A DNA stretch of 64,000 nt from Salpingoeca rosetta (Eukaryota; Protista; Choanoflagellata), in assembly GCA_033442325.1 (NCBI GenBank), contig JAWQFM010000031.1, positions 271,393 through 335,392 on the forward strand, in the 5' to 3' direction. Both the position numbers and the translations under genes were made by a program. The notes below the pieces were generated by a model, which saw nothing but the letters and a program-made list of their open reading frames with translations, had not been told where the DNA came from and did no database searches. Shown piece by piece: positions 57,117 to 63,912 of the stretch (positions are counted from its first letter, which is position 1; each line of letters starts with the position of its first letter).

Positions 57117-57896
57117 ATGGCATTCCTTGAGGAACTGGGTGGCGAGCGCAAGGCTTAAGTGGTGAAGGCGCTTGAGAAGTGGAACTACACGCGCGAGGTG
57201 GCGTCCAAGGTCACGCGTACATTCTACGCGCTCGATTGCACTTGCTCCATGAGCACCAGCTTGAAGAAGACCACGCAAGTCATTGGCACCGTCTTTGAGC
57301 GCACCGAGAAGATTCTTGACGACGCCGGTTTGCTTGGCAACAGCGATGTCGCCATGCAGCTGGCGGCATACCGCAACTACAACGTGGATGCGGACCAGCT
57401 ACTGCAGGTGTCGGGCTGGGAGCAGAACCCGCTTGCACTGCGGCAGTTCCTGTTTGGCCTGAAGGTGAATGGTGGCTGGGGCAACGAAGCGATTGAGGTT
57501 GCGCTTCACCGCGCCAACACGGAGAAGGACGTGTCGCAGGTGATTTTGATTGGCGACGCACCAGCCAACTCCCCAGATGAGGTGGCATCCAAGCGAAACA
57601 GCAAAGGTGAGCGTTACTGGTCCAAGTTTCCCGAGTTTGCCAAATCCACGACCGCGGCGGCCGAGCTACAGAAGCTGAAAGAGAAGGGCATTCCAGTTCA
57701 CGCCTTCTTCATTGATCCTCGCGCCAAGAACTTCTTCAGGCACGCTGCTCAGATGACTGGTGGGCGCTGCGAGTTCCTGGACATTGAGAAGGCGTCTCGC
57801 GCCGACCAGCTCACGAATCTTGTCTCCGAAGAGCTGCTGCGGCGTGTGGGTGGCGATGACCTCGTCAACACCTACCGAGCCACTTTCTGCAAGTGA
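57117..57896 (+). pseudogene. von Willebrand factor A (vWA) domain ORF, intronless, with in-frame TAA at 57156-57158; possible pseudogene or 5'-truncated fragment
   Basis: MIDAS-like ALDCTCSM, AYRNY, GGWGNEAIEVAL, VILIGDAP, IPVHAFFI and A..TGG. The frame reads MAFLEELGGERKA*VVKALEKW. Confidence 0.65.
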
Positions 57897-57970: not shown

Positions 57971-58729
57971 AATGTCAGTGTGTGCATGCGAGTTCATTGT
58001 GCTGTTTTGAATGATGTGATTGTTGCACTGCGTGACTTGGCTGCATTCGCCTTTCGTGCACCTCGCGCACTGGGCGTGTTGACTGTTGTGTGTACAGGGG
58101 TTCGTTCATTTTCACGTTCACTCCACCCTGCGTTGCCTCTCCTTTCCTATTTCACACTGTTGTCGACTGTGTTTGGTCTTGATGAGTTGAGTCTTGTGGT
58201 GTTGCTTGCGGTGTTGTTGTGCTTCCAGCATTCATGTCACTCATGCAAGCGAGCTGACCGTCTTCTGTTGTTTTTGCACGTCGTCCTGTGTCTTGTTTGT
58301 CAACATGGCTGTTTTGTTGTTGAACGAAGTAAACTTGTTGATGAATCCTACCACTCATCATGTCAAGACGTAAGAATCACATGCGTCAGCAAAGAAGAGG
58401 TGTTTGGTGACATCACGTCAGAATTCCTTCCCCATTCCTTTCCGTTCACCCCCTCCCCACCCCACCCCACCCCTCACGATTCTTCCACCCACCCGTCCCT
58501 CCATTAAACCCACGTTCTCACGTTGCAACAACGGCTTTATTCCCTCCAACACTCCAACACGTTGATGAAACACAGTTCCCAACACCAACAGCACCAAACA
58601 CCAAACGAAACAAGAAAGAAAGCAAATAACCATCCCAAAAAGAAAAGTCGTTGTAACTGTAACAACTGAAAAGAACACGCACGCGATGGTAACAGCAATG
58701 CGCATGTGTGCATGTGTTTGTGTACGGCT

Positions 58730-58964
58730 TCACCACGAGGTGGGCGGGGATTGCGGCGTGTGCTCGCTGTGCGACTTGTTGCGGGCGCGCATGTTCTGAA
58801 AGTAGATGTTGAGCTGCTTGAGCGACAGCATGGGAAACTGGCGCAGCAGGGCCTCCTTGTCGCTCCTGCGCCGTGATGTTGTGCGGCGGTACGGGTGAGT
58901 GCAAACCAGTGGTGAACGCAACAATGCACAGTCGTGAACACAGCAACACACAGCAACACACAGC

Positions 58965-59001
<37 letters not shown>

Positions 59002-59648
59002 ATACACACACCGCCACCAGCCTGACCGGGTTGGCCGGCGGTTGACGCGGAAGAAGTATTCCCTCAGCTGCTTTGAGACATCGGGCGGCATCTTGCGCGG
59101 GCGCTTGGGCTTTGTCGCAACGTTATCGCTGGCAGTTGTTGGCGCGTGCTGCGGGCATGCGACAGTGTCCGTTGACATGTTGGCGGCAAAGTGCGGGTGG
59201 ATGTGGAGCAAGTTGGGCACAGCTGCAGGCGGGAAGGGCGATGCCATGTTCGGCTGCCCGCTCGACGCACGTCTCTGCGCATGTGTGTGTGTGTGTGTGT
59301 GGTTGTGTGTGTGCGTGTGCGTGTTTGTGTGAGCAGTTGTGGCGCAGCACATGTACATGTGAAATTCTCTCCCTCTTCCCCCCGACACGAGTAAACACCT
59401 CTTCACCCCCCCCCCCTGTCACCAACAACAACCCCCCTTCTCTCCAACACAACTCACCCCTCCGCTGCTGCTGCTGCTGCTGCTGCGCCGCCGTCGCATC
59501 TCTGTCTGCATCTCAGCGACCTGTGCAGCCACCCTCACGCGCTCCTCCTGCGCATGTGCATGTGCATGTGTGCATGTGTGCGAGCACGTCAGTTACATGC
59601 AATCAACGCAAAACACCACCCTTGCACCATCCTTCCCTCAACGCAACC

Positions 59649-59688
<40 letters not shown>

Positions 59689-60546
59689 ACCACCACCATC
59701 ACACACACTCTCTCTCACCACCAACTACCTTTCCCCCCTCCCTCACCTCGGTGATGTCGAAGACGGCGGCGTGCATGCGGATGACCTTGTGCGAGGCCTT
59801 TGGCCCGCCAAACCACCGGTTCGTCTGCGTACTGGAGAGAATAGACGAGTAGTGCTGCTGCGAGATGACCACGCCCAGCTGGGTGAGGAACGCCGCCTTC
59901 TGCTTCTGGCTGCGCAGCCCAAACAGCGACAGCCTGCGGTCCACCTCGCACATGAGCTCGCGCGCCTCCTTTACGTTGAGGACGGGCCCGCACTCTGCCT
60001 CTTCCTTGACGGCCATGCTGCAGCTCACGCTCTTGCTCCTCTTGCTGTTGTTGTTGTTGGTGCTGGTGTTTGTGGTGGTGTGGTGGTTGCTGCTGGTTCG
60101 GTCGGTGTGGTTGGTGTTGTTGATTGCGCTGGGCGTATCGGCACTGCAGCTTGCTGTTCTCCGCGCGCTTGCACGGCGTTGCTGCGTGGCCTTTGCGCCG
60201 CGCTTGTGGGTGTTGGTACCTGGAGAATATGAGGCGGATATGATGTGTGTATGAGGCGGGTATGATGTTCGTGTGAGTCAAACACTGGTCGCGCGCACGT
60301 CGTGCATAAATGCATGCACGCATGGACACACACACACGCCCTTGAATGCACGCTGCTTTGTACCACTCCATGACTCACCAGTTGCTCGCTGGGGGACGCG
60401 GGACTTGTTGCGGCGAGCGTCTGCGCAATGACGACAGGCGGCACAAACGAACAACAGGTTCACGGTGAGCGAGGAAGGCCTCAAGACACGAAAGGCACAG
60501 CGGGTGAGCGAGGAAGGCCTCAAGACACGAATGGCACAACGTTCAA

Positions 60547-60606
<60 letters not shown>

Positions 60607-62545
60607 CGCACAGCAACGTACGCTTGCGGCGCGCGGATGGGTGCGTCGTGGCGGTCTCGTCAGCGTCGCTGCCGCTGTCGTCAACGTCGCCCTCATCTCC
60701 GCTGTCATCCGTATCGGGGACGCCCTCGCTCTCCTTCCTGCCGCCAGTCATCGCGCTCGCTGAGGGCAGGTCCACGGCAGGCACGTGCTGCATGTGCGTG
60801 TCGAGCGGCAGGGCGTGGTCGTGGGCAGGGTGCATGCCGGTGGAGCCTGGCAGCGCAATAGGGTCATCGGCACGCGCAAACCCAAGCGCATCTGTAACAG
60901 ACAGCGTGTGGTGGCGGTGGTGGTGGTGCAGGAGCGATTGATCGCACATTGGATGCTGCAGCTCAAACGGGTGCATGCGGGGCATGGCTGACCACGTTGG
61001 GGCGGCGGCGGCGGCGGTGACGCCAAAGGGGAGGCCCATGCTGGACAGGCTGGACGGCGGCATGCCCGGGGCAGGGTGGCCGTCGAGATAGTGCGGGTGG
61101 TGCGTGTTGAAGTCTGGCAAGCGATCGCCCGGCATGGCGGCTGTGGTGGCGACGGGGAACAACACGCTGTTGCCCTGGTGGTGGGGCTGGTGCTGGTGCT
61201 GTTGGTGGTGTTGATGCTGGTGCTGGTGCTGCTGTTGGTGGTCACGCACGTCGTCAGGCACCTCCGCAAACGGCTGGTGCTGTTGTGCCTGGACCATGTG
61301 GTGGTGGTGGATGTGGTGGTGCTGGTGGCGATAGACTTGGGAGGCGAGGCGATCGCAGTGCTGTCTGCCAAAGGACGTCGGGATGGCCGCCGTGCCCACA
61401 AACGGGTGCTGTCCGATGGGCACACGCGCGAGGGCTGGGCGGTCCTGCAGCGGCATGTGCGGCTGCATGGGCGCCTGATGGTAGATGTGACCCCGAAATG
61501 CGTGGGCTTCCACCACCGGCGGCGGTTGTGGGGACTGGTGGAGTGCGTTGGACGTGTCGGACGTGGTCGCGGCCGTGGCAGTTGTGGTGGTCGCAGTTGT
61601 GGTGGTCTCAGTGTGGGATGCCGCGGGCTGTTGCGCGTGCTGTTGTCGTTGCTGCTGTGCAGGTCCTTGCTCCTGTTCCCCAGCTGCAAATAACGGAGAG
61701 CCGGAGATGGGGGGGGGGGGGTTGGTGACGTTACAGCGAGCATGTACGGTTGATGGTGAAGTGTACGCAAGGGCACGCACAAACACAGACACAGAAACAC
61801 AGACACAGACACAGACACAGACACAGACACAGACACATGTGCATTCATACACAGACACACAAAGGAACAACTTACGTGGTCGTCGCTGACGATGCAGAAA
61901 AGTTGAGGAGGAGCGGGAGATGGATGTCGGGGATGGCAGCATGGAGGATGCTGCAGACGAGTTTGAAGAGTTTGACGAGGATGAGGGTGATGATCCCGAG
62001 GTGTACGCGGAGGAAAGCGAGCTGTCGTGGGCGCCATCACTCGCCTCCGCGACCTGCGCGTCCTCCTGCCATGCCGGCAACGCACGCGTGTCGGTGTGCA
62101 AGGCAGGATGCCGGAGGTTCTGGTGGTGCTGGTGCTGCTGGTGGTGGTGGTGCGGGGAAGGCTTTGGCCGCCCGTTTTGGTCGGTGAAACTTGGGGTAGG
62201 TGAGGGTGTCTTTGTCGCCGCAGGGGTGGTGGTGGATGTGAGTGTTGTTGTGTGCGGTGGATCGGCCATCGTCACAATGCACGAGGGCGGCGAGAGCGGT
62301 GGCGACGCAGGCACCAGCGGTTGCACGACGCGACGAGGAGGCGCACCCGTGTCAGCGGCCCGACAGCCTTGCTGGTGCAGGTGAGCACTGTCCGGGTGTT
62401 GGAGTTGTTGTTGCTGTAGTGGATGTGAAGATTGCGGGAGAGGTGACAACGGAGCGATGGTGATGCTGTTGCCAGAGCACTGCCGATGGATGTGTGTGGA
62501 CAGCTCTTGCGGTGCAACCGCCTGTAGAATGGGGTCAACGTCCAT
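58730..62545 (-). CDS. Putative homeodomain transcription factor: long His/Gln/Pro/Ser-rich N-terminus, CUT/POU-like helical domain, C-terminal atypical homeodomain; ~7 exons, 5' end uncertain
   Basis: Splicing 59027/58865 gives KPKRPRKMPPDVSKQLREYFFRVNRRPTRSDKEALLRQFPMLSLKQLNIYFQNMRARNK, with L16, F20, P26, L40, F49, N51 and R53 of the homeodomain. Upstream exons at ~62545-61876, ~61684-60622, ~60420-60378, 60219-59747, 59520-59458 and 59274-59027 join in frame. Confidence 0.78.
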
Positions 62546-63416
62546 TTCACCGAGAAGAAGAAGAACAAGGAAGGAGGAGAACAAGGGAGGAGAACAAGAA
62601 CAAAGGGGGGGGGGTGCGAAACGAGGAGCACCGCAGGCAACCAAGGAGGGGTCGTCGCTTTCCAACGCGTGGTGTCGCCGAGGTGGTGCGTGGTGAAGGT
62701 GCTTTTGTTCTGGCCGTTGCCCGTGTGTGGTTGCAGGGAACAGAAGGGGTTGTCGTGCAGATGGCGAGGATCACTTGGCAAAGCGCACAGGAGTGCAGGG
62801 CATATAAGGTGGGCGAGAAGGAAGGGGAACAAGTGGAGACAGCCACGTTTGCCAGACAACAAGCAAGAAGCAAGAGAAAGACAAGAGAAGAAGGAGAGAA
62901 GAGGGAGAAGGAGAAGGAGAAGAGGGAGAGAAAAGGCAAAGACACACGCACACAGCAACACAACCGCAGCAACACAGTGAACGTGCATGCAAGCAAGCAA
63001 CAAGCAACAAGCCACAAGCCACAAGCAAGGAGGGAAAACTTACGCTGTGTTGTGTGCGTCATGTGTGTGTGGAAAGAAACTTGTTTGTGCGGTGGTTGCT
63101 TGCAGGCAAAGGTTGCTGGGCGACGGGGCGTTTCGAACCGCTCTTTCGAAAATCGACACCAAGCATTTCGCGTCTCTTCGAGGCATCGTTGTGCATGGGT
63201 AGAAAGCGTTTAATAGTGCATCAAATCAGAAGAGAAGGCGGTGTGTGGCGGCATCATGCGGGTGTGCAGGATTCCATGTTCAATTAAAACAAAATGTGAA
63301 CGACGAAGCGTCACGATGAAACGGGGTGGGCCTACACACAAAGTGCAACGGCGCGCCAGCATGAGAAATCAAAGCAACAACGTTAAAAGCGCATGAAAGT
63401 AAGATGAATTTTTCAT

Positions 63417-63565
<149 letters not shown>

Positions 63566-63912
63566 GTGTGTGTGTGGTGGAACGAACGCGCCATCACTTA
63601 CATTGTGCAAACACACACGACCTCACACACACATGCAAACACACACGACCTCACACAAACATACACGCATCAACCTACCCATTGCAGCGCGAGCTGTGCC
63701 TGCTCCAATGCATCCACGTGGGTCTGAAGAACAGCAAAAAGGGTGTGAGCGCATTGGATGATTGGGAGGGGGGTGTTGGTGTTGGGCGGGGACGTTGGCG
63801 CGTGGTGTGGGCAGGCGGAAAGAAAGGCAAGGCAGCAAGGCAGACAGCTGGAAAGATAAACGGGAGGGGGGAAACGTAGACGGGAGGAAGCCAGACGCAC
63901 ACAGGCACACAC

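What the first reader, a model, noticed from the sequence alone, without database searches (positions are those of the whole stretch)
58730..59980. CUT/POU-like domain coupled to an atypical non-TALE homeodomain in a probable choanoflagellate
Seen: about 75 aa upstream of the homeodomain lies the only other globular-looking segment, LNVKEARELMCEVDRRLSLFGLRSQKQKAAFLTQLGVVISQQHYSSILSSTQTNRWFGGPKASHKVIRMHAAV (~59750-59980). The first half echoes the POU-specific pattern (RR..LG.TQ......L..L.G.VFSQ). The second half echoes CUT (SQ...S.LL....W........RM). The homeodomain has an aromatic non-Trp residue at 48 (YFQN), like ONECUT (FFMN) and SATB (FFQN), has NRRPT resembling ONECUT NKRPS, and lacks the TALE three-residue insert. 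Known: CUT- and POU-class bipartite homeobox genes are largely animal-type. Inference: a divergent pre-metazoan member of this architecture that standard HMMs could miss.
Basis: partly seen in the sequence, partly recalled or inferred. Interest (0 to 1): 0.8.

Follow-up and report, generated by a model that had tools for sequence, protein, structure and literature searches.

The report
Choanoflagellate CUT/POU-like domain plus homeodomain
A spliced, expressed gene of the choanoflagellate Salpingoeca rosetta joins a previously unrecognised helical domain, confidently predicted to fold like the animal CUT and POU-specific DNA-binding domains, to a divergent homeodomain, so this two-part "animal-style" design also exists outside animals in a form that standard domain models miss.

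Summary
The window is Salpingoeca rosetta. The gene is PTSG_09736 (906 aa, minus strand, 7 GT-AG exons), and transcript contigs from two studies carry all exons in one mRNA. Residues 668-772 ("X") have no Pfam match and no PDB sequence match. X is 49% identical to a Choanoeca flexa protein while the flanks do not align. It defines a small family: Choanoeca flexa and C. perplexa, Monosiga, Tara Oceans contigs and two uncultured eukaryotes.

AlphaFold2 models X at pLDDT 93.9 as five helices. In an exhaustive structural search of 48,161 PDB chains, the nine best matches are all CUT or POU-specific domains. The best is SATB1 CUT1 (Z 9.2, 83 of 84 residues). Bacterial XRE regulators score lower.

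The invariant residues sit at the N-termini of helices 2 and 3, where this fold contacts DNA. The C-terminal homeodomain is real, non-TALE and Q50, but cannot be assigned to a class. Y48 is not conserved in the family.

Sequence-level kinship to CUT is only marginal (hhalign P about 0.02) and absent for POU. I therefore read X as a new lambda-repressor-like domain family that works like CUT/POU, without proven membership of either class. The scan had not reported this gene before.

The parts
58730..62545 (-). Coding region of PTSG_09736 (906 aa). The seven exons are 62545-61876, 61683-60622, 60420-60379, 60219-59747, 59547-59458, 59274-59027 and 58865-58730.
   Evidence: The spliced translation equals P0001 exactly and all introns are GT-AG. 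Transcript contigs of runs X4 and X5 join the same exons.
59747..59992 (-). Domain X, helices 1-4 (residues 668-749): a CUT/POU-specific-like, lambda-repressor-like domain.
   Evidence: AF2 pLDDT 93.9. VIA-align top matches are SATB1 CUT1 at Z 9.2 and Oct4 / Oct-1 POU-specific at Z 7.6-8.4. It is conserved in 6 other proteins.
59879..59908 (-). Helix 2 of X (residues 696-705). The invariant S695-Q696 N-cap sits just before and at its start. It is the first helix of the helix-turn-helix.
   Evidence: Helix limits come and the invariant columns.
59825..59860 (-). Helix 3 of X (residues 712-723), the putative recognition helix. It opens with the invariant motif SQQHYS (711-716).
   Evidence: hhalign places this motif on the SQGTLS start of the aligned CUT segment.
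59458..59547 (-). A 30-codon exon (residues 750-779) holding helix 5 of X, a basic/Ser-rich tail and the start of the linker.
   Evidence: AF2 helix 82-104. A 93-letter gap in the transcript contig corresponds to this exon. An equivalent small exon is present in the Tara contigs L007-L010.
59110..59274 (-). Disordered linker (residues 780-834).
   Evidence: pLDDT is 42-52 in the X-plus-homeodomain model, and this stretch does not align between family members.
59027..59109 (-). Homeodomain, first part (positions 1-28): N-terminal arm with R5, helix 1 and the NRRPT motif.
58766..58865 (-). Homeodomain, second part (positions 28-60): helix 2, a one-residue longer turn, and helix 3 with Y48 F49 Q50 N51 R53.
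   Evidence: Pfam PF00046 scores 23.9 bits against a cutoff of 22.9 on the excised region. PDB hits are LMX1A at 25 bits and HNF6 at 20.5 bits. AF2 gives three helices at pLDDT about 90.
58531..58729 (-). 3' untranslated region.
   Evidence: Transcript contigs reach 58525-58531.

Best explanation
PTSG_09736 encodes a bipartite sequence-specific transcription factor. A long, low-complexity N-terminal region rich in Q, H, S and T is followed by domain X. X is a five-helix lambda-repressor-like domain of the CUT/POU-specific structural subtype (residues 668-772). A disordered linker of about 60 aa connects X to a divergent non-TALE Q50 homeodomain (residues 835-895). By analogy with POU, CUT and HNF1 factors, X most likely places helix 3 in the major groove. 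Helix 3 carries the invariant SQQHYS motif, and the invariant Ser-Gln cap of helix 2 sits beside it. The tethered homeodomain (R5, Q50, N51, R53) would read an adjacent TAAT-like site, so the protein would recognise a composite site. X is a lineage-restricted sequence family, known from choanoflagellates and a few uncultured eukaryotes, that no curated model covers. It is used both with a homeodomain and without one. Shown here: the gene model, transcription of all exons in one mRNA, conservation of X, the predicted fold and its structural neighbours. Inferred: DNA binding by X, cooperation with the homeodomain, and any evolutionary link to the animal CUT or POU classes.
For: Gene and transcript. 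Conservation: the exhaustive phmmer search found X in P0002, P0003, P0004, P0005, P0008 and P0011. X is 49% identical to the Choanoeca flexa protein over 84 aa, and no other part of the two proteins aligns significantly. P0002 and P0008 carry X and a homeodomain in single uninterrupted ORFs. Fold: AF2 gives pLDDT 93.9 and pTM 0.83 with five helices, and X reaches about 95 again in the longer model. The ESM Atlas's own independent model of the protein matches a POU domain protein and HTH_3 proteins over residues 670-775. Structural neighbours: in the exhaustive VIA-align search the top 9 of 48,161 chains are all CUT or POU-specific domains. These are SATB1 CUT1 (Z 9.2, rmsd 2.8, 83 of 84 residues), Oct4 8.2 and 7.7, Oct-1 7.6, CUX2 7.5, SATB2 7.5, SATB1 7.3, Brn-5 7.2 and HNF6 7.2. 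In the second look, 14 CUT/POU chains score Z 6.4-9.2, and then the scores drop to 5.3 or less for bacterial XRE-type proteins. The invariant residues lie at the N-termini of helices 2 and 3. From textbook knowledge of lambda and 434 repressors and POU-specific domains, these are the Gln positions that contact DNA. The X domains are basic, with pI 8.9-11.4. Homeodomain.
Against: No sequence method links X to any known family at accepted thresholds. Pfam gives nothing for any member. The X profile against PDB sequences finds only ArgR at E 0.38. hhalign probability is 3% or less. All Foldseek E-values are 1.7 or higher. Z-scores of 7-9 are within the range that helical models can reach without kinship, as the tool's own note says. 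The alignment behind the model has only 6 sequences. In Choanoeca and Monosiga, X occurs without a homeodomain, so the pairing is not obligatory. No binding data exist. Two raw-read RNA runs gave essentially no coverage of the real exons.
Confidence: 0.75

Rival explanations
1. X is a true, highly diverged homologue of the animal CUT domain. The CUT-plus-homeodomain design (ONECUT/CUX/SATB type) would then predate animals and have been lost or overlooked in early-branching animals.
For: The best structural match is SATB1 CUT1, covering 83 of 84 residues and including helix 5, which POU-specific domains lack. hhalign aligns X helices 3-4 with the SQGTLS...PW...RM stretch of ONECUT CUT, a placement consistent with the modelled helix positions of X. 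Scores are about 18.2-18.4, with P 0.023, 0.014 and 0.012 in three runs, and 5 of 300 column-shuffled controls score as high. ESM features list CUT clusters among the top three hits, but the score of 0.79 is a lead only. HNF6 is the second-best PDB hit of the S. rosetta homeodomain.
Against: hhalign probability is only 2-3%. X against SATB1 CUT1 is not significant (P 0.64). Pfam CUT is not matched. The family homeodomain profile does not favour ONECUT. The CUT class is scored absent from the sponge, ctenophore, cnidarian and placozoan sets in Ryan et al. 2010 (PMC2959044), so orthology would need several losses.
Confidence: 0.15
2. X is a degenerate POU-specific domain, and the gene descends from the choanoflagellate POU gene described by Gao et al. 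2024. S. rosetta would then keep a cryptic POU rather than lacking one.
For: POU factors with Q50 homeodomains exist in two choanoflagellates and were reported absent from the other species (PMC11564870). POU-specific domains score Z 7.2-8.4 with almost full coverage. The spacing between the Gln caps of helix 2 and helix 3 is 16 residues in most X domains, against 17 in Oct-1 and 12 in ONECUT (read from the sequences). The Atlas structure search puts a POU domain protein first (TM 0.54) and gives it the highest query TM (row 2, TM 0.61).
Against: hhalign of X against Oct-1 POU-specific scores 9.0 with P 0.53 over 10 columns. Pfam Pou is not matched. The exhaustive phmmer search listed only 12 proteins at E 0.001 or better; six carry X and five are multi-homeodomain proteins, and the ten of the 12 scanned with Pfam have no Pou domain. 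The homeodomain lacks POU-type helix 3 residues and best matches LIM and PRD-like homeodomains. X has a fifth helix.
Confidence: 0.12
3. X arose independently of the CUT and POU-specific domains. It could derive from a generic lambda/XRE-type helix-turn-helix or arise de novo within choanoflagellates, and it was joined to a homeodomain by exon or domain shuffling. The resemblance to animal bipartite factors would be convergent.
For: There is no significant sequence link to any animal family. X is mobile, occurring both with and without a homeodomain. XRE-family chains also match at Z up to 7.0, and HTH_3 families fill most of the Atlas structure lists. X of S. rosetta is closer to the homeodomain-less Choanoeca X (49%) than to the X of homeodomain-bearing P0002 (36%).
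Against: CUT and POU chains rank above the bacterial XRE-type proteins: 14 chains at Z 6.4-9.2, then a drop to 5.3. X shares their longer helices and their helix 3-4 loop with a conserved Trp.
Confidence: 0.4
4. X is not a DNA-binding domain. It would be a protein-interaction or dimerisation helical bundle, with the homeodomain as the only DNA reader.
For: No binding data exist. Helical bundles can give spurious structural matches (note). A long amphipathic, charged helix 5 follows X.
Against: The invariant residues cluster at the two helix N-termini that contact DNA in this fold, not on one hydrophobic face. The domains are basic. In Choanoeca proteins X is the only recognisable nucleic-acid-binding candidate.
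Confidence: 0.1

Closest known systems
CUT domain of CUT-class homeobox proteins (SATB1/2, CUX1/2, ONECUT/HNF6; Pfam PF02376)
   Same: Both are five-helix lambda-repressor-like domains placed N-terminal to a homeodomain through a flexible linker. The best superposition is SATB1 CUT1 (Z 9.2, rmsd 2.8, 83 of 84 residues). Both share Ser/Thr-Gln at the start of helix 3, a Trp in the helix 3-4 loop, Arg-Met in helix 4 thirteen residues after the Trp, and a PE..R-like start of helix 5.
   Different: X does not match the Pfam model. hhalign probability is 2-3%. The Trp lies two residues later than in CUT. The helix 2-3 connection is 4-5 residues longer in most members. The partner homeodomain does not group with CUT-class homeodomains in profile searches. 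The CUT class is reported missing from non-bilaterian animals (PMC2959044).
POU-specific domain of POU-class factors, including the choanoflagellate POU of Gao et al. 2024 (PMC11564870)
   Same: The core fold is the same (Z 7.2-8.4). Both have an extended helix 2-3 connection, Gln caps on helices 2 and 3, and a tether to a homeodomain. In choanoflagellate POU that homeodomain is also Q50. Both occur in choanoflagellates.
   Different: There is no detectable sequence similarity (hhalign P 0.53, no Pfam Pou hit). X has an extra fifth helix. The POU signature residues T45 and R49 are not conserved. The homeodomain is not POU-like. Gao et al. report POU absent from the choanoflagellates they sampled other than S. 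helianthica and M. fluctuans; S. rosetta is part of their data set.
HNF1 (POU-specific-like domain in HNF-1_N plus an atypical homeodomain)
   Same: Both pair a divergent lambda-like domain that POU models miss with an atypical homeodomain. An ESM feature search listed an HNF-1_N cluster first (score 0.79, a lead only).
   Different: The structural match to HNF1A is weak (Z 4.9). The HNF1 homeodomain has a long insert between helices 2 and 3, whereas this one has one extra residue there.
Bacterial/phage XRE (HTH_3) lambda-repressor-like regulators
   Same: They share the basic helix-turn-helix core, with Gln at the start of the recognition helix (Z 4-7).
   Different: They are shorter (57-68 residues aligned against 68-92 for CUT/POU), score lower, lack helix 5 and are not linked to homeodomains.

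Membership tests
Homeodomain (PF00046), non-TALE | Match to the homeodomain profile and a three-helix fold | tested here: met
   The excised region scores 23.9 bits against a cutoff of 22.9, though only 19.3 bits in the full protein. PDB homeodomains match at E 2e-4. AF2 gives three helices at pLDDT about 90.
Homeodomain (PF00046), non-TALE | Conserved R5, F49, N51 and R53, and no 3-residue insert between helices 1 and 2 | tested here: met
   Alignment to LMX1A and HNF6 shows no gap between helices 1 and 2. The only difference is one extra residue before helix 3. R5, F49, Q50, N51 and R53 are present, and position 48 is Y.
CUT class (CUT domain + homeodomain) | CUT domain recognised by PF02376 | tested here: not met
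   No CUT hit for P0001 or any of the 6 family members, even at E up to 10.
CUT class (CUT domain + homeodomain) | Five-helix CUT fold | tested here: met
   SATB1 CUT1 Z 9.2, rmsd 2.8, 83 of 84 residues. CUX2 and SATB2 score Z 7.5-7.8, and HNF6 7.2.
CUT class (CUT domain + homeodomain) | Profile-level sequence kinship to CUT domains | tested here: inconclusive
   Against a 22-sequence ONECUT profile hhalign gives score 18.3, P 0.023, probability 2%. A trimmed local rerun gives P 0.012, and 5 of 300 column shuffles score as high. Against SATB1 CUT1 alone P is 0.64. CUX and SATB profiles were not available.
CUT class (CUT domain + homeodomain) | Homeodomain groups with CUT-class homeodomains | tested here: inconclusive
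   HNF6 is the second-best PDB hit for the S. rosetta homeodomain (20.5 bits, against LMX1A at 25.2). It is not among the 60 rows shown for the three-sequence family profile. No phylogeny was run.
POU class | POU-specific domain recognised by PF00157, with signature helix 3 (SQTTISRFE) | tested here: not met
   No Pfam hit. hhalign against Oct-1 POU-specific gives P 0.53 over 10 columns. Only the S-Q of the motif is shared.
POU class | Four-helix POU-specific fold | tested here: met
   Oct4, Oct-1, Brn2, POU2F3 and Brn-5 score Z 7.2-8.4 with 68-92 residues aligned.
POU class | POU-type homeodomain | tested here: not met
   No POU homeodomain appears among the listed PDB hits of either the single sequence or the family profile.
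HNF class | HNF-1_N domain and a long insert between homeodomain helices 2 and 3 | tested here: not met
   No Pfam HNF-1_N hit. HNF1A scores Z 4.9. There is only one extra residue in the helix 2-3 turn.
Lambda repressor-like DNA-binding fold | Helix-turn-helix core with 4-5 helices; DNA binding through helix 3 | tested here: met
   The fold is met by prediction. DNA binding itself cannot be tested with these tools.

The most novel reading that the evidence does not exclude
X is the surviving choanoflagellate sister of the animal CUT domain, or of the common ancestor of CUT and POU-specific domains. [quoted passage not shown] The homeodomain-less Choanoeca and Monosiga proteins pair X with an upstream module that looks like a ubiquitin-like oligomerisation domain (ESM lead only). 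On this reading they would be a SATB/COMPASS-like design (ULD plus CUT) outside animals.
Probability: 0.2. Interest if true: 0.85.

Novelty: new variant of a known kind. Interest (0 to 1): 0.66.

Why it matters
Homeobox classes that pair a lambda-repressor-like domain with a homeodomain (POU, CUT, HNF) have been listed as animal innovations (Grau-Bove et al. 2017, PMC5560861; Ryan et al. 2010, PMC2959044). POU was pushed back to two choanoflagellates only in 2024 (PMC11564870), and that study reported it absent from the rest. This report shows that S. rosetta, the genetically tractable model choanoflagellate, has a transcribed gene with the same two-part design. Its upstream domain is invisible to Pfam and to sequence searches against solved structures. 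The domain also defines a small conserved family across distant choanoflagellates. This makes one question directly testable in a tractable organism: was bipartite DNA recognition by tethered helix-turn-helix modules invented before animals, or several times? SELEX, knockouts and binding-site mapping could address it. It also warns that domain-count surveys based on Pfam thresholds under-report such factors in unicellular relatives of animals.

Tried and rejected
- Pfam scans of each exon, the full protein and all family members gave no CUT, Pou, HNF-1_N or HTH hit.
- PDB sequence searches with X alone found nothing at E up to 10. The X profile found only ArgR at E 0.38. I rejected an ArgR-like winged helix because the model has no beta wing.
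- The word-index homologue search with the C-terminal 252 aa returned only the protein itself. The exhaustive search was therefore justified.
- The JGI metagenome scan with the X alignment only re-found the P0002 contigs.
- Foldseek against PDB gave no significant E-value, although CUT and Oct4 were at the top of the list.
- hhalign of X against Oct-1 POU-specific and against SATB1 CUT1 as single sequences was not significant.
- I rejected the TALE class (no insert between helices 1 and 2) and the HNF class (no long insert between helices 2 and 3).
- The idea that Y48 marks a CUT-like homeodomain is weakened, because P0002 has F48 and P0008 has W48.
- Raw-read RNA runs X21 and X22 covered only low-complexity stretches, and their odd joints there are cross-mapping, so I did not use them.
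- Literature searches for the locus tag, and for structure-based reports on this gene, found nothing. The supplements of Gao et al. were not held, so I could not see where that paper places the S. rosetta homeodomain.
- Three short reference sequences were typed: the HNF6 CUT core, Oct-1 POU-specific and SATB1 CUT1. Each was first verified as 100% identical to a PDB chain.
It served only to retrieve database proteins.
- From the CUT search I used only invertebrate or otherwise divergent fragments. I left out the 93-99% identical hits, which may come from vertebrate or human DNA, and fetched none of their contigs.
Full report
**What is there**

The window is eukaryotic DNA whose introns are full of GT/CA repeats. 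On the minus strand, the region 58730-62545 holds a seven-exon gene. A 795-aa open frame from its 5' part retrieved one database protein at 100% identity: hypothetical protein PTSG_09736 of Salpingoeca rosetta, 906 aa, called "Homeobox domain-containing protein" by UniRef. My hand-made splice model of the last four exons equals the annotated C-terminus.

A boundary search reproduced the whole protein. The exons are 62545-61876, 61683-60622, 60420-60379, 60219-59747, 59547-59458, 59274-59027 and 58865-58730, and all introns are GT-AG. Assembled transcript contigs from two separate studies (runs X4 and X5) join these exons in single records. One 2,916-nt contig spans from the 3' UTR to exon 1. 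Its 93 letters that lie on none of the listed pieces correspond to the 90-nt exon 5. X and the homeodomain are on one mRNA, and the organism is a choanoflagellate, not an animal.

**The homeodomain**

Residues 835-895 reach the Pfam homeodomain threshold only when excised (23.9 bits against a cutoff of 22.9; 19.3 bits in the full protein). Their best matches among solved structures are LMX1A (25 bits, E 2e-4) and HNF6/ONECUT1 (20.5 bits).

- The alignment shows no insert between helices 1 and 2, so this is not a TALE homeodomain.
- It has one extra residue before helix 3.
- R5, F49, Q50, N51 and R53 are present, and position 48 is Y.
- A phase-2 intron splits the codon of position 28.
- AlphaFold2 models three helices at pLDDT about 90.

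A profile of the three X-linked homeodomains (P0001, P0002, P0008) best matches LIM, DUX/PRD-like and HOX13 homeodomains. HNF6 is not among the 60 rows shown. Position 48 is Y, F and W in the three proteins. The homeodomain is therefore real, atypical and Q50, which suggests a TAAT-like specificity. Its ONECUT/SATB-like look is specific to S. rosetta, and its class is unresolved.

**The upstream domain X: sequence level**

Residues 668-772 have no Pfam hit at E up to 10 and no PDB sequence hit. The word-index search with the C-terminal 252 aa found only the protein itself. That left the protein open, so I ran the exhaustive phmmer search. It found 12 proteins in 1.84 billion at E 0.001 or better, six of which carry X. 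Their sources are:

| Protein | Source | Architecture |
|---|---|---|
| P0003 | Choanoeca flexa | X, no homeodomain |
| P0004 | Choanoeca perplexa | X, no homeodomain |
| P0011 | Monosiga brevicollis XP_001744512 | X, no homeodomain |
| P0005 | 28 marine assemblies, including Tara Oceans | X exon only (fragment) |
| P0002 | three JGI metagenome contigs | X and a homeodomain in one uninterrupted 478-aa ORF |
| P0008 | one Logan contig | X and a homeodomain in one 265-aa ORF |

S. rosetta X is 49% identical to Choanoeca flexa X over 84 aa (E 1e-24), while no other part of the two proteins aligns significantly. The invariant columns are D685, L688, S695, Q696, K699, A701, L703, the block SQQHYS (711-716), W727, G729 and A733. 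The Tara contigs show the same exon end after helix 4 and an equivalent small exon after a GT-repeat intron. X is thus a constrained module in a lineage-restricted family.

**The upstream domain X: fold**

With only six sequences, AlphaFold2 gives mean pLDDT 93.9 and pTM 0.83. It predicts five helices at residues 7-23, 29-38, 45-56, 64-78 and 82-104 of the model. X is modelled the same way in the longer construct. The ESM Atlas's own model of the protein matches a POU domain protein and many HTH_3 proteins over residues 670-775.

Foldseek against PDB gave no significant E-value, but listed SATB2 CUT2, Oct4 and SATB1 CUT repeat 1 at the top. The exhaustive VIA-align search of 48,161 representative chains is clearer. 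Ranks 1-9 are all CUT or POU-specific domains:

| Rank | Chain | Z |
|---|---|---|
| 1 | SATB1 CUT1 (rmsd 2.8, 83 of 84 residues, 20% identity) | 9.2 |
| 2 | Oct4 | 8.2 |
| 3 | Oct4 | 7.7 |
| 4 | Oct-1 POU-specific | 7.6 |
| 5 | CUX2 CUT | 7.5 |
| 6 | SATB2 CUT2 | 7.5 |
| 7 | SATB1 | 7.3 |
| 8 | Brn-5 | 7.2 |
| 9 | HNF6 | 7.2 |

An XRE regulator follows at Z 7.0, and HNF1A scores 4.9. In the second look at Foldseek's candidates, fourteen CUT/POU chains score Z 6.4-9.2, and then the scores drop to 5.3 or less for bacterial controller, HipB and XRE proteins.

These Z values are moderate for a helical domain, as the tool warns. Even so, eukaryotic homeodomain-partner domains take every one of the top nine ranks with near-complete coverage. 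I take that as evidence that X belongs to the CUT/POU-specific structural subtype of the lambda-repressor-like fold.

**CUT or POU?**

X has a fifth helix that superposes on CUT helix 5; POU-specific domains lack it. On the other hand, the spacing between the Gln caps of helices 2 and 3 is 16 residues in most X domains, against 17 in Oct-1 and 12 in ONECUT. P0008, which lacks five residues there, has a spacing of 11 (sequences).

For profile comparison I built a 22-sequence ONECUT-type CUT alignment from database fragments. The hhalign results are:

| X profile compared with | Score | P | Notes |
|---|---|---|---|
| ONECUT CUT profile (22 sequences) | 18.3 | 0.023 | probability 2%; X helices 3-4 aligned with SQGTLS...PW...RM |
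| ONECUT CUT profile, trimmed, local rerun | 18.2 | 0.012 | 5 of 300 column-shuffled controls score as high |
| Single ONECUT sequence (P0058) | 18.4 | 0.014 | 39 columns |
| Oct-1 POU-specific (single sequence) | 9.0 | 0.53 | 10 columns |
| SATB1 CUT1 (single sequence) | 8.5 | 0.64 | 42 columns |

There is a faint ONECUT-like sequence signal, and its placement is consistent with the modelled helix positions of X. It is far from proof of homology. Distribution argues the other way. CUT-class genes were scored absent from the sponge, ctenophore, cnidarian and placozoan sets (PMC2959044). POU exists in all animals and in two choanoflagellates (PMC11564870). The origin of X stays open.

**How it most likely works**

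In lambda and 434 repressors and in POU-specific and CUT domains, the residues at the N-termini of helices 2 and 3 contact the phosphate backbone and the bases in the major groove. In several of these proteins those residues are glutamines. This is established structural knowledge, recalled and not computed here.

X keeps exactly these positions invariant (S695-Q696 and S711-Q712-Q713). Its conserved core is basic, with pI 8.9-11.4. I therefore infer that X is a DNA-binding helix-turn-helix. Tethered by a disordered linker of about 60 aa to a Q50 homeodomain, the protein would read a composite site as POU, ONECUT and HNF1 factors do. The linker is about 25 aa in P0002 and about 10 aa in P0008. 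The long Q/H/S/T-rich N-terminus is a plausible regulatory region. None of the binding steps has been shown.

**Novelty**

Surveys based on Pfam architectures list the CUT, Pou and HNF homeobox families as animal novelties (PMC5560861). Gao et al. found canonical POU only in S. helianthica and Mylnosiga fluctuans and reported it absent from the remaining available choanoflagellates. I found no paper that mentions this locus tag or a CUT-like domain in choanoflagellates. The finding is best filed as a new variant of a known kind: a new sequence family with a known fold, in a known type of two-domain arrangement, in an unexpected lineage.

**Limits**

- The X alignment is shallow (six sequences).
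- No homeodomain phylogeny was run.
- The second module of the homeodomain-less family members could not be folded.
- The organisms behind P0002 and P0008 are unknown.

Noticed in passing
P0003:224-290, P0004:228-294, P0011:478-545 (not in the window): The homeodomain-less X proteins of Choanoeca and Monosiga share a second conserved module of about 70 aa, lying 140-200 residues upstream of X. An ESM feature search (scores 0.80-0.87, a lead only) points to ubiquitin-like oligomerisation domains: GRHL1_C, TDP-43_N, CIDE-N, PB1 and the Par3 N-terminus. A ubiquitin-like module plus a CUT-like domain recalls the SATB proteins. PTSG_09736 lacks this module.
   Followed up: partly
P0011 (Monosiga brevicollis XP_001744512), around residues 685-712: The Monosiga gene model carries a 28-residue insertion inside X, between helices 2 and 3, that no other member has. 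The model also runs on into a JmjC region (1470 aa in total). This looks like a retained intron plus a fusion of two neighbouring genes in the annotation.
   Followed up: no
L007, L008, L010 (Tara Oceans and other marine metagenome contigs): A marine relative, seen in 28 assemblies, has the X exon ending at the same place as in S. rosetta. A GT/CA-repeat intron and a small charged exon follow, as in S. rosetta. The contigs end before any homeodomain exon.
   Followed up: partly
window 63420-63620, minus strand: A long trinucleotide repeat, about 200 nt, lies upstream of the gene's 5' end. It reads as poly-T, poly-Q or poly-N in the three frames.
   Followed up: no
window 57159-57896, plus strand: A 245-aa ORF converges on the 3' end of the homeobox gene. 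It carries a D-x-T-x-S-like motif and looks like a von Willebrand A / metal-site domain protein. I did not analyse it.
   Followed up: no
window 58955-59021, 59271-59335, 59650-59700, 60560-60610, 61760-61830: Almost every intron of this gene contains a (GT)n/(CA)n microsatellite. Several introns stay open in frame, so that a 795-aa ORF reads straight through two of them.
   Followed up: no
window 60040-60070, 60920-60930, 61190-61240, 62397-62548: Raw RNA reads and contigs show many odd joints and loose ends at the CAG/CAA-rich coding repeats. I take these for cross-mapping from other low-complexity transcripts, not real rearrangements.
   Followed up: no
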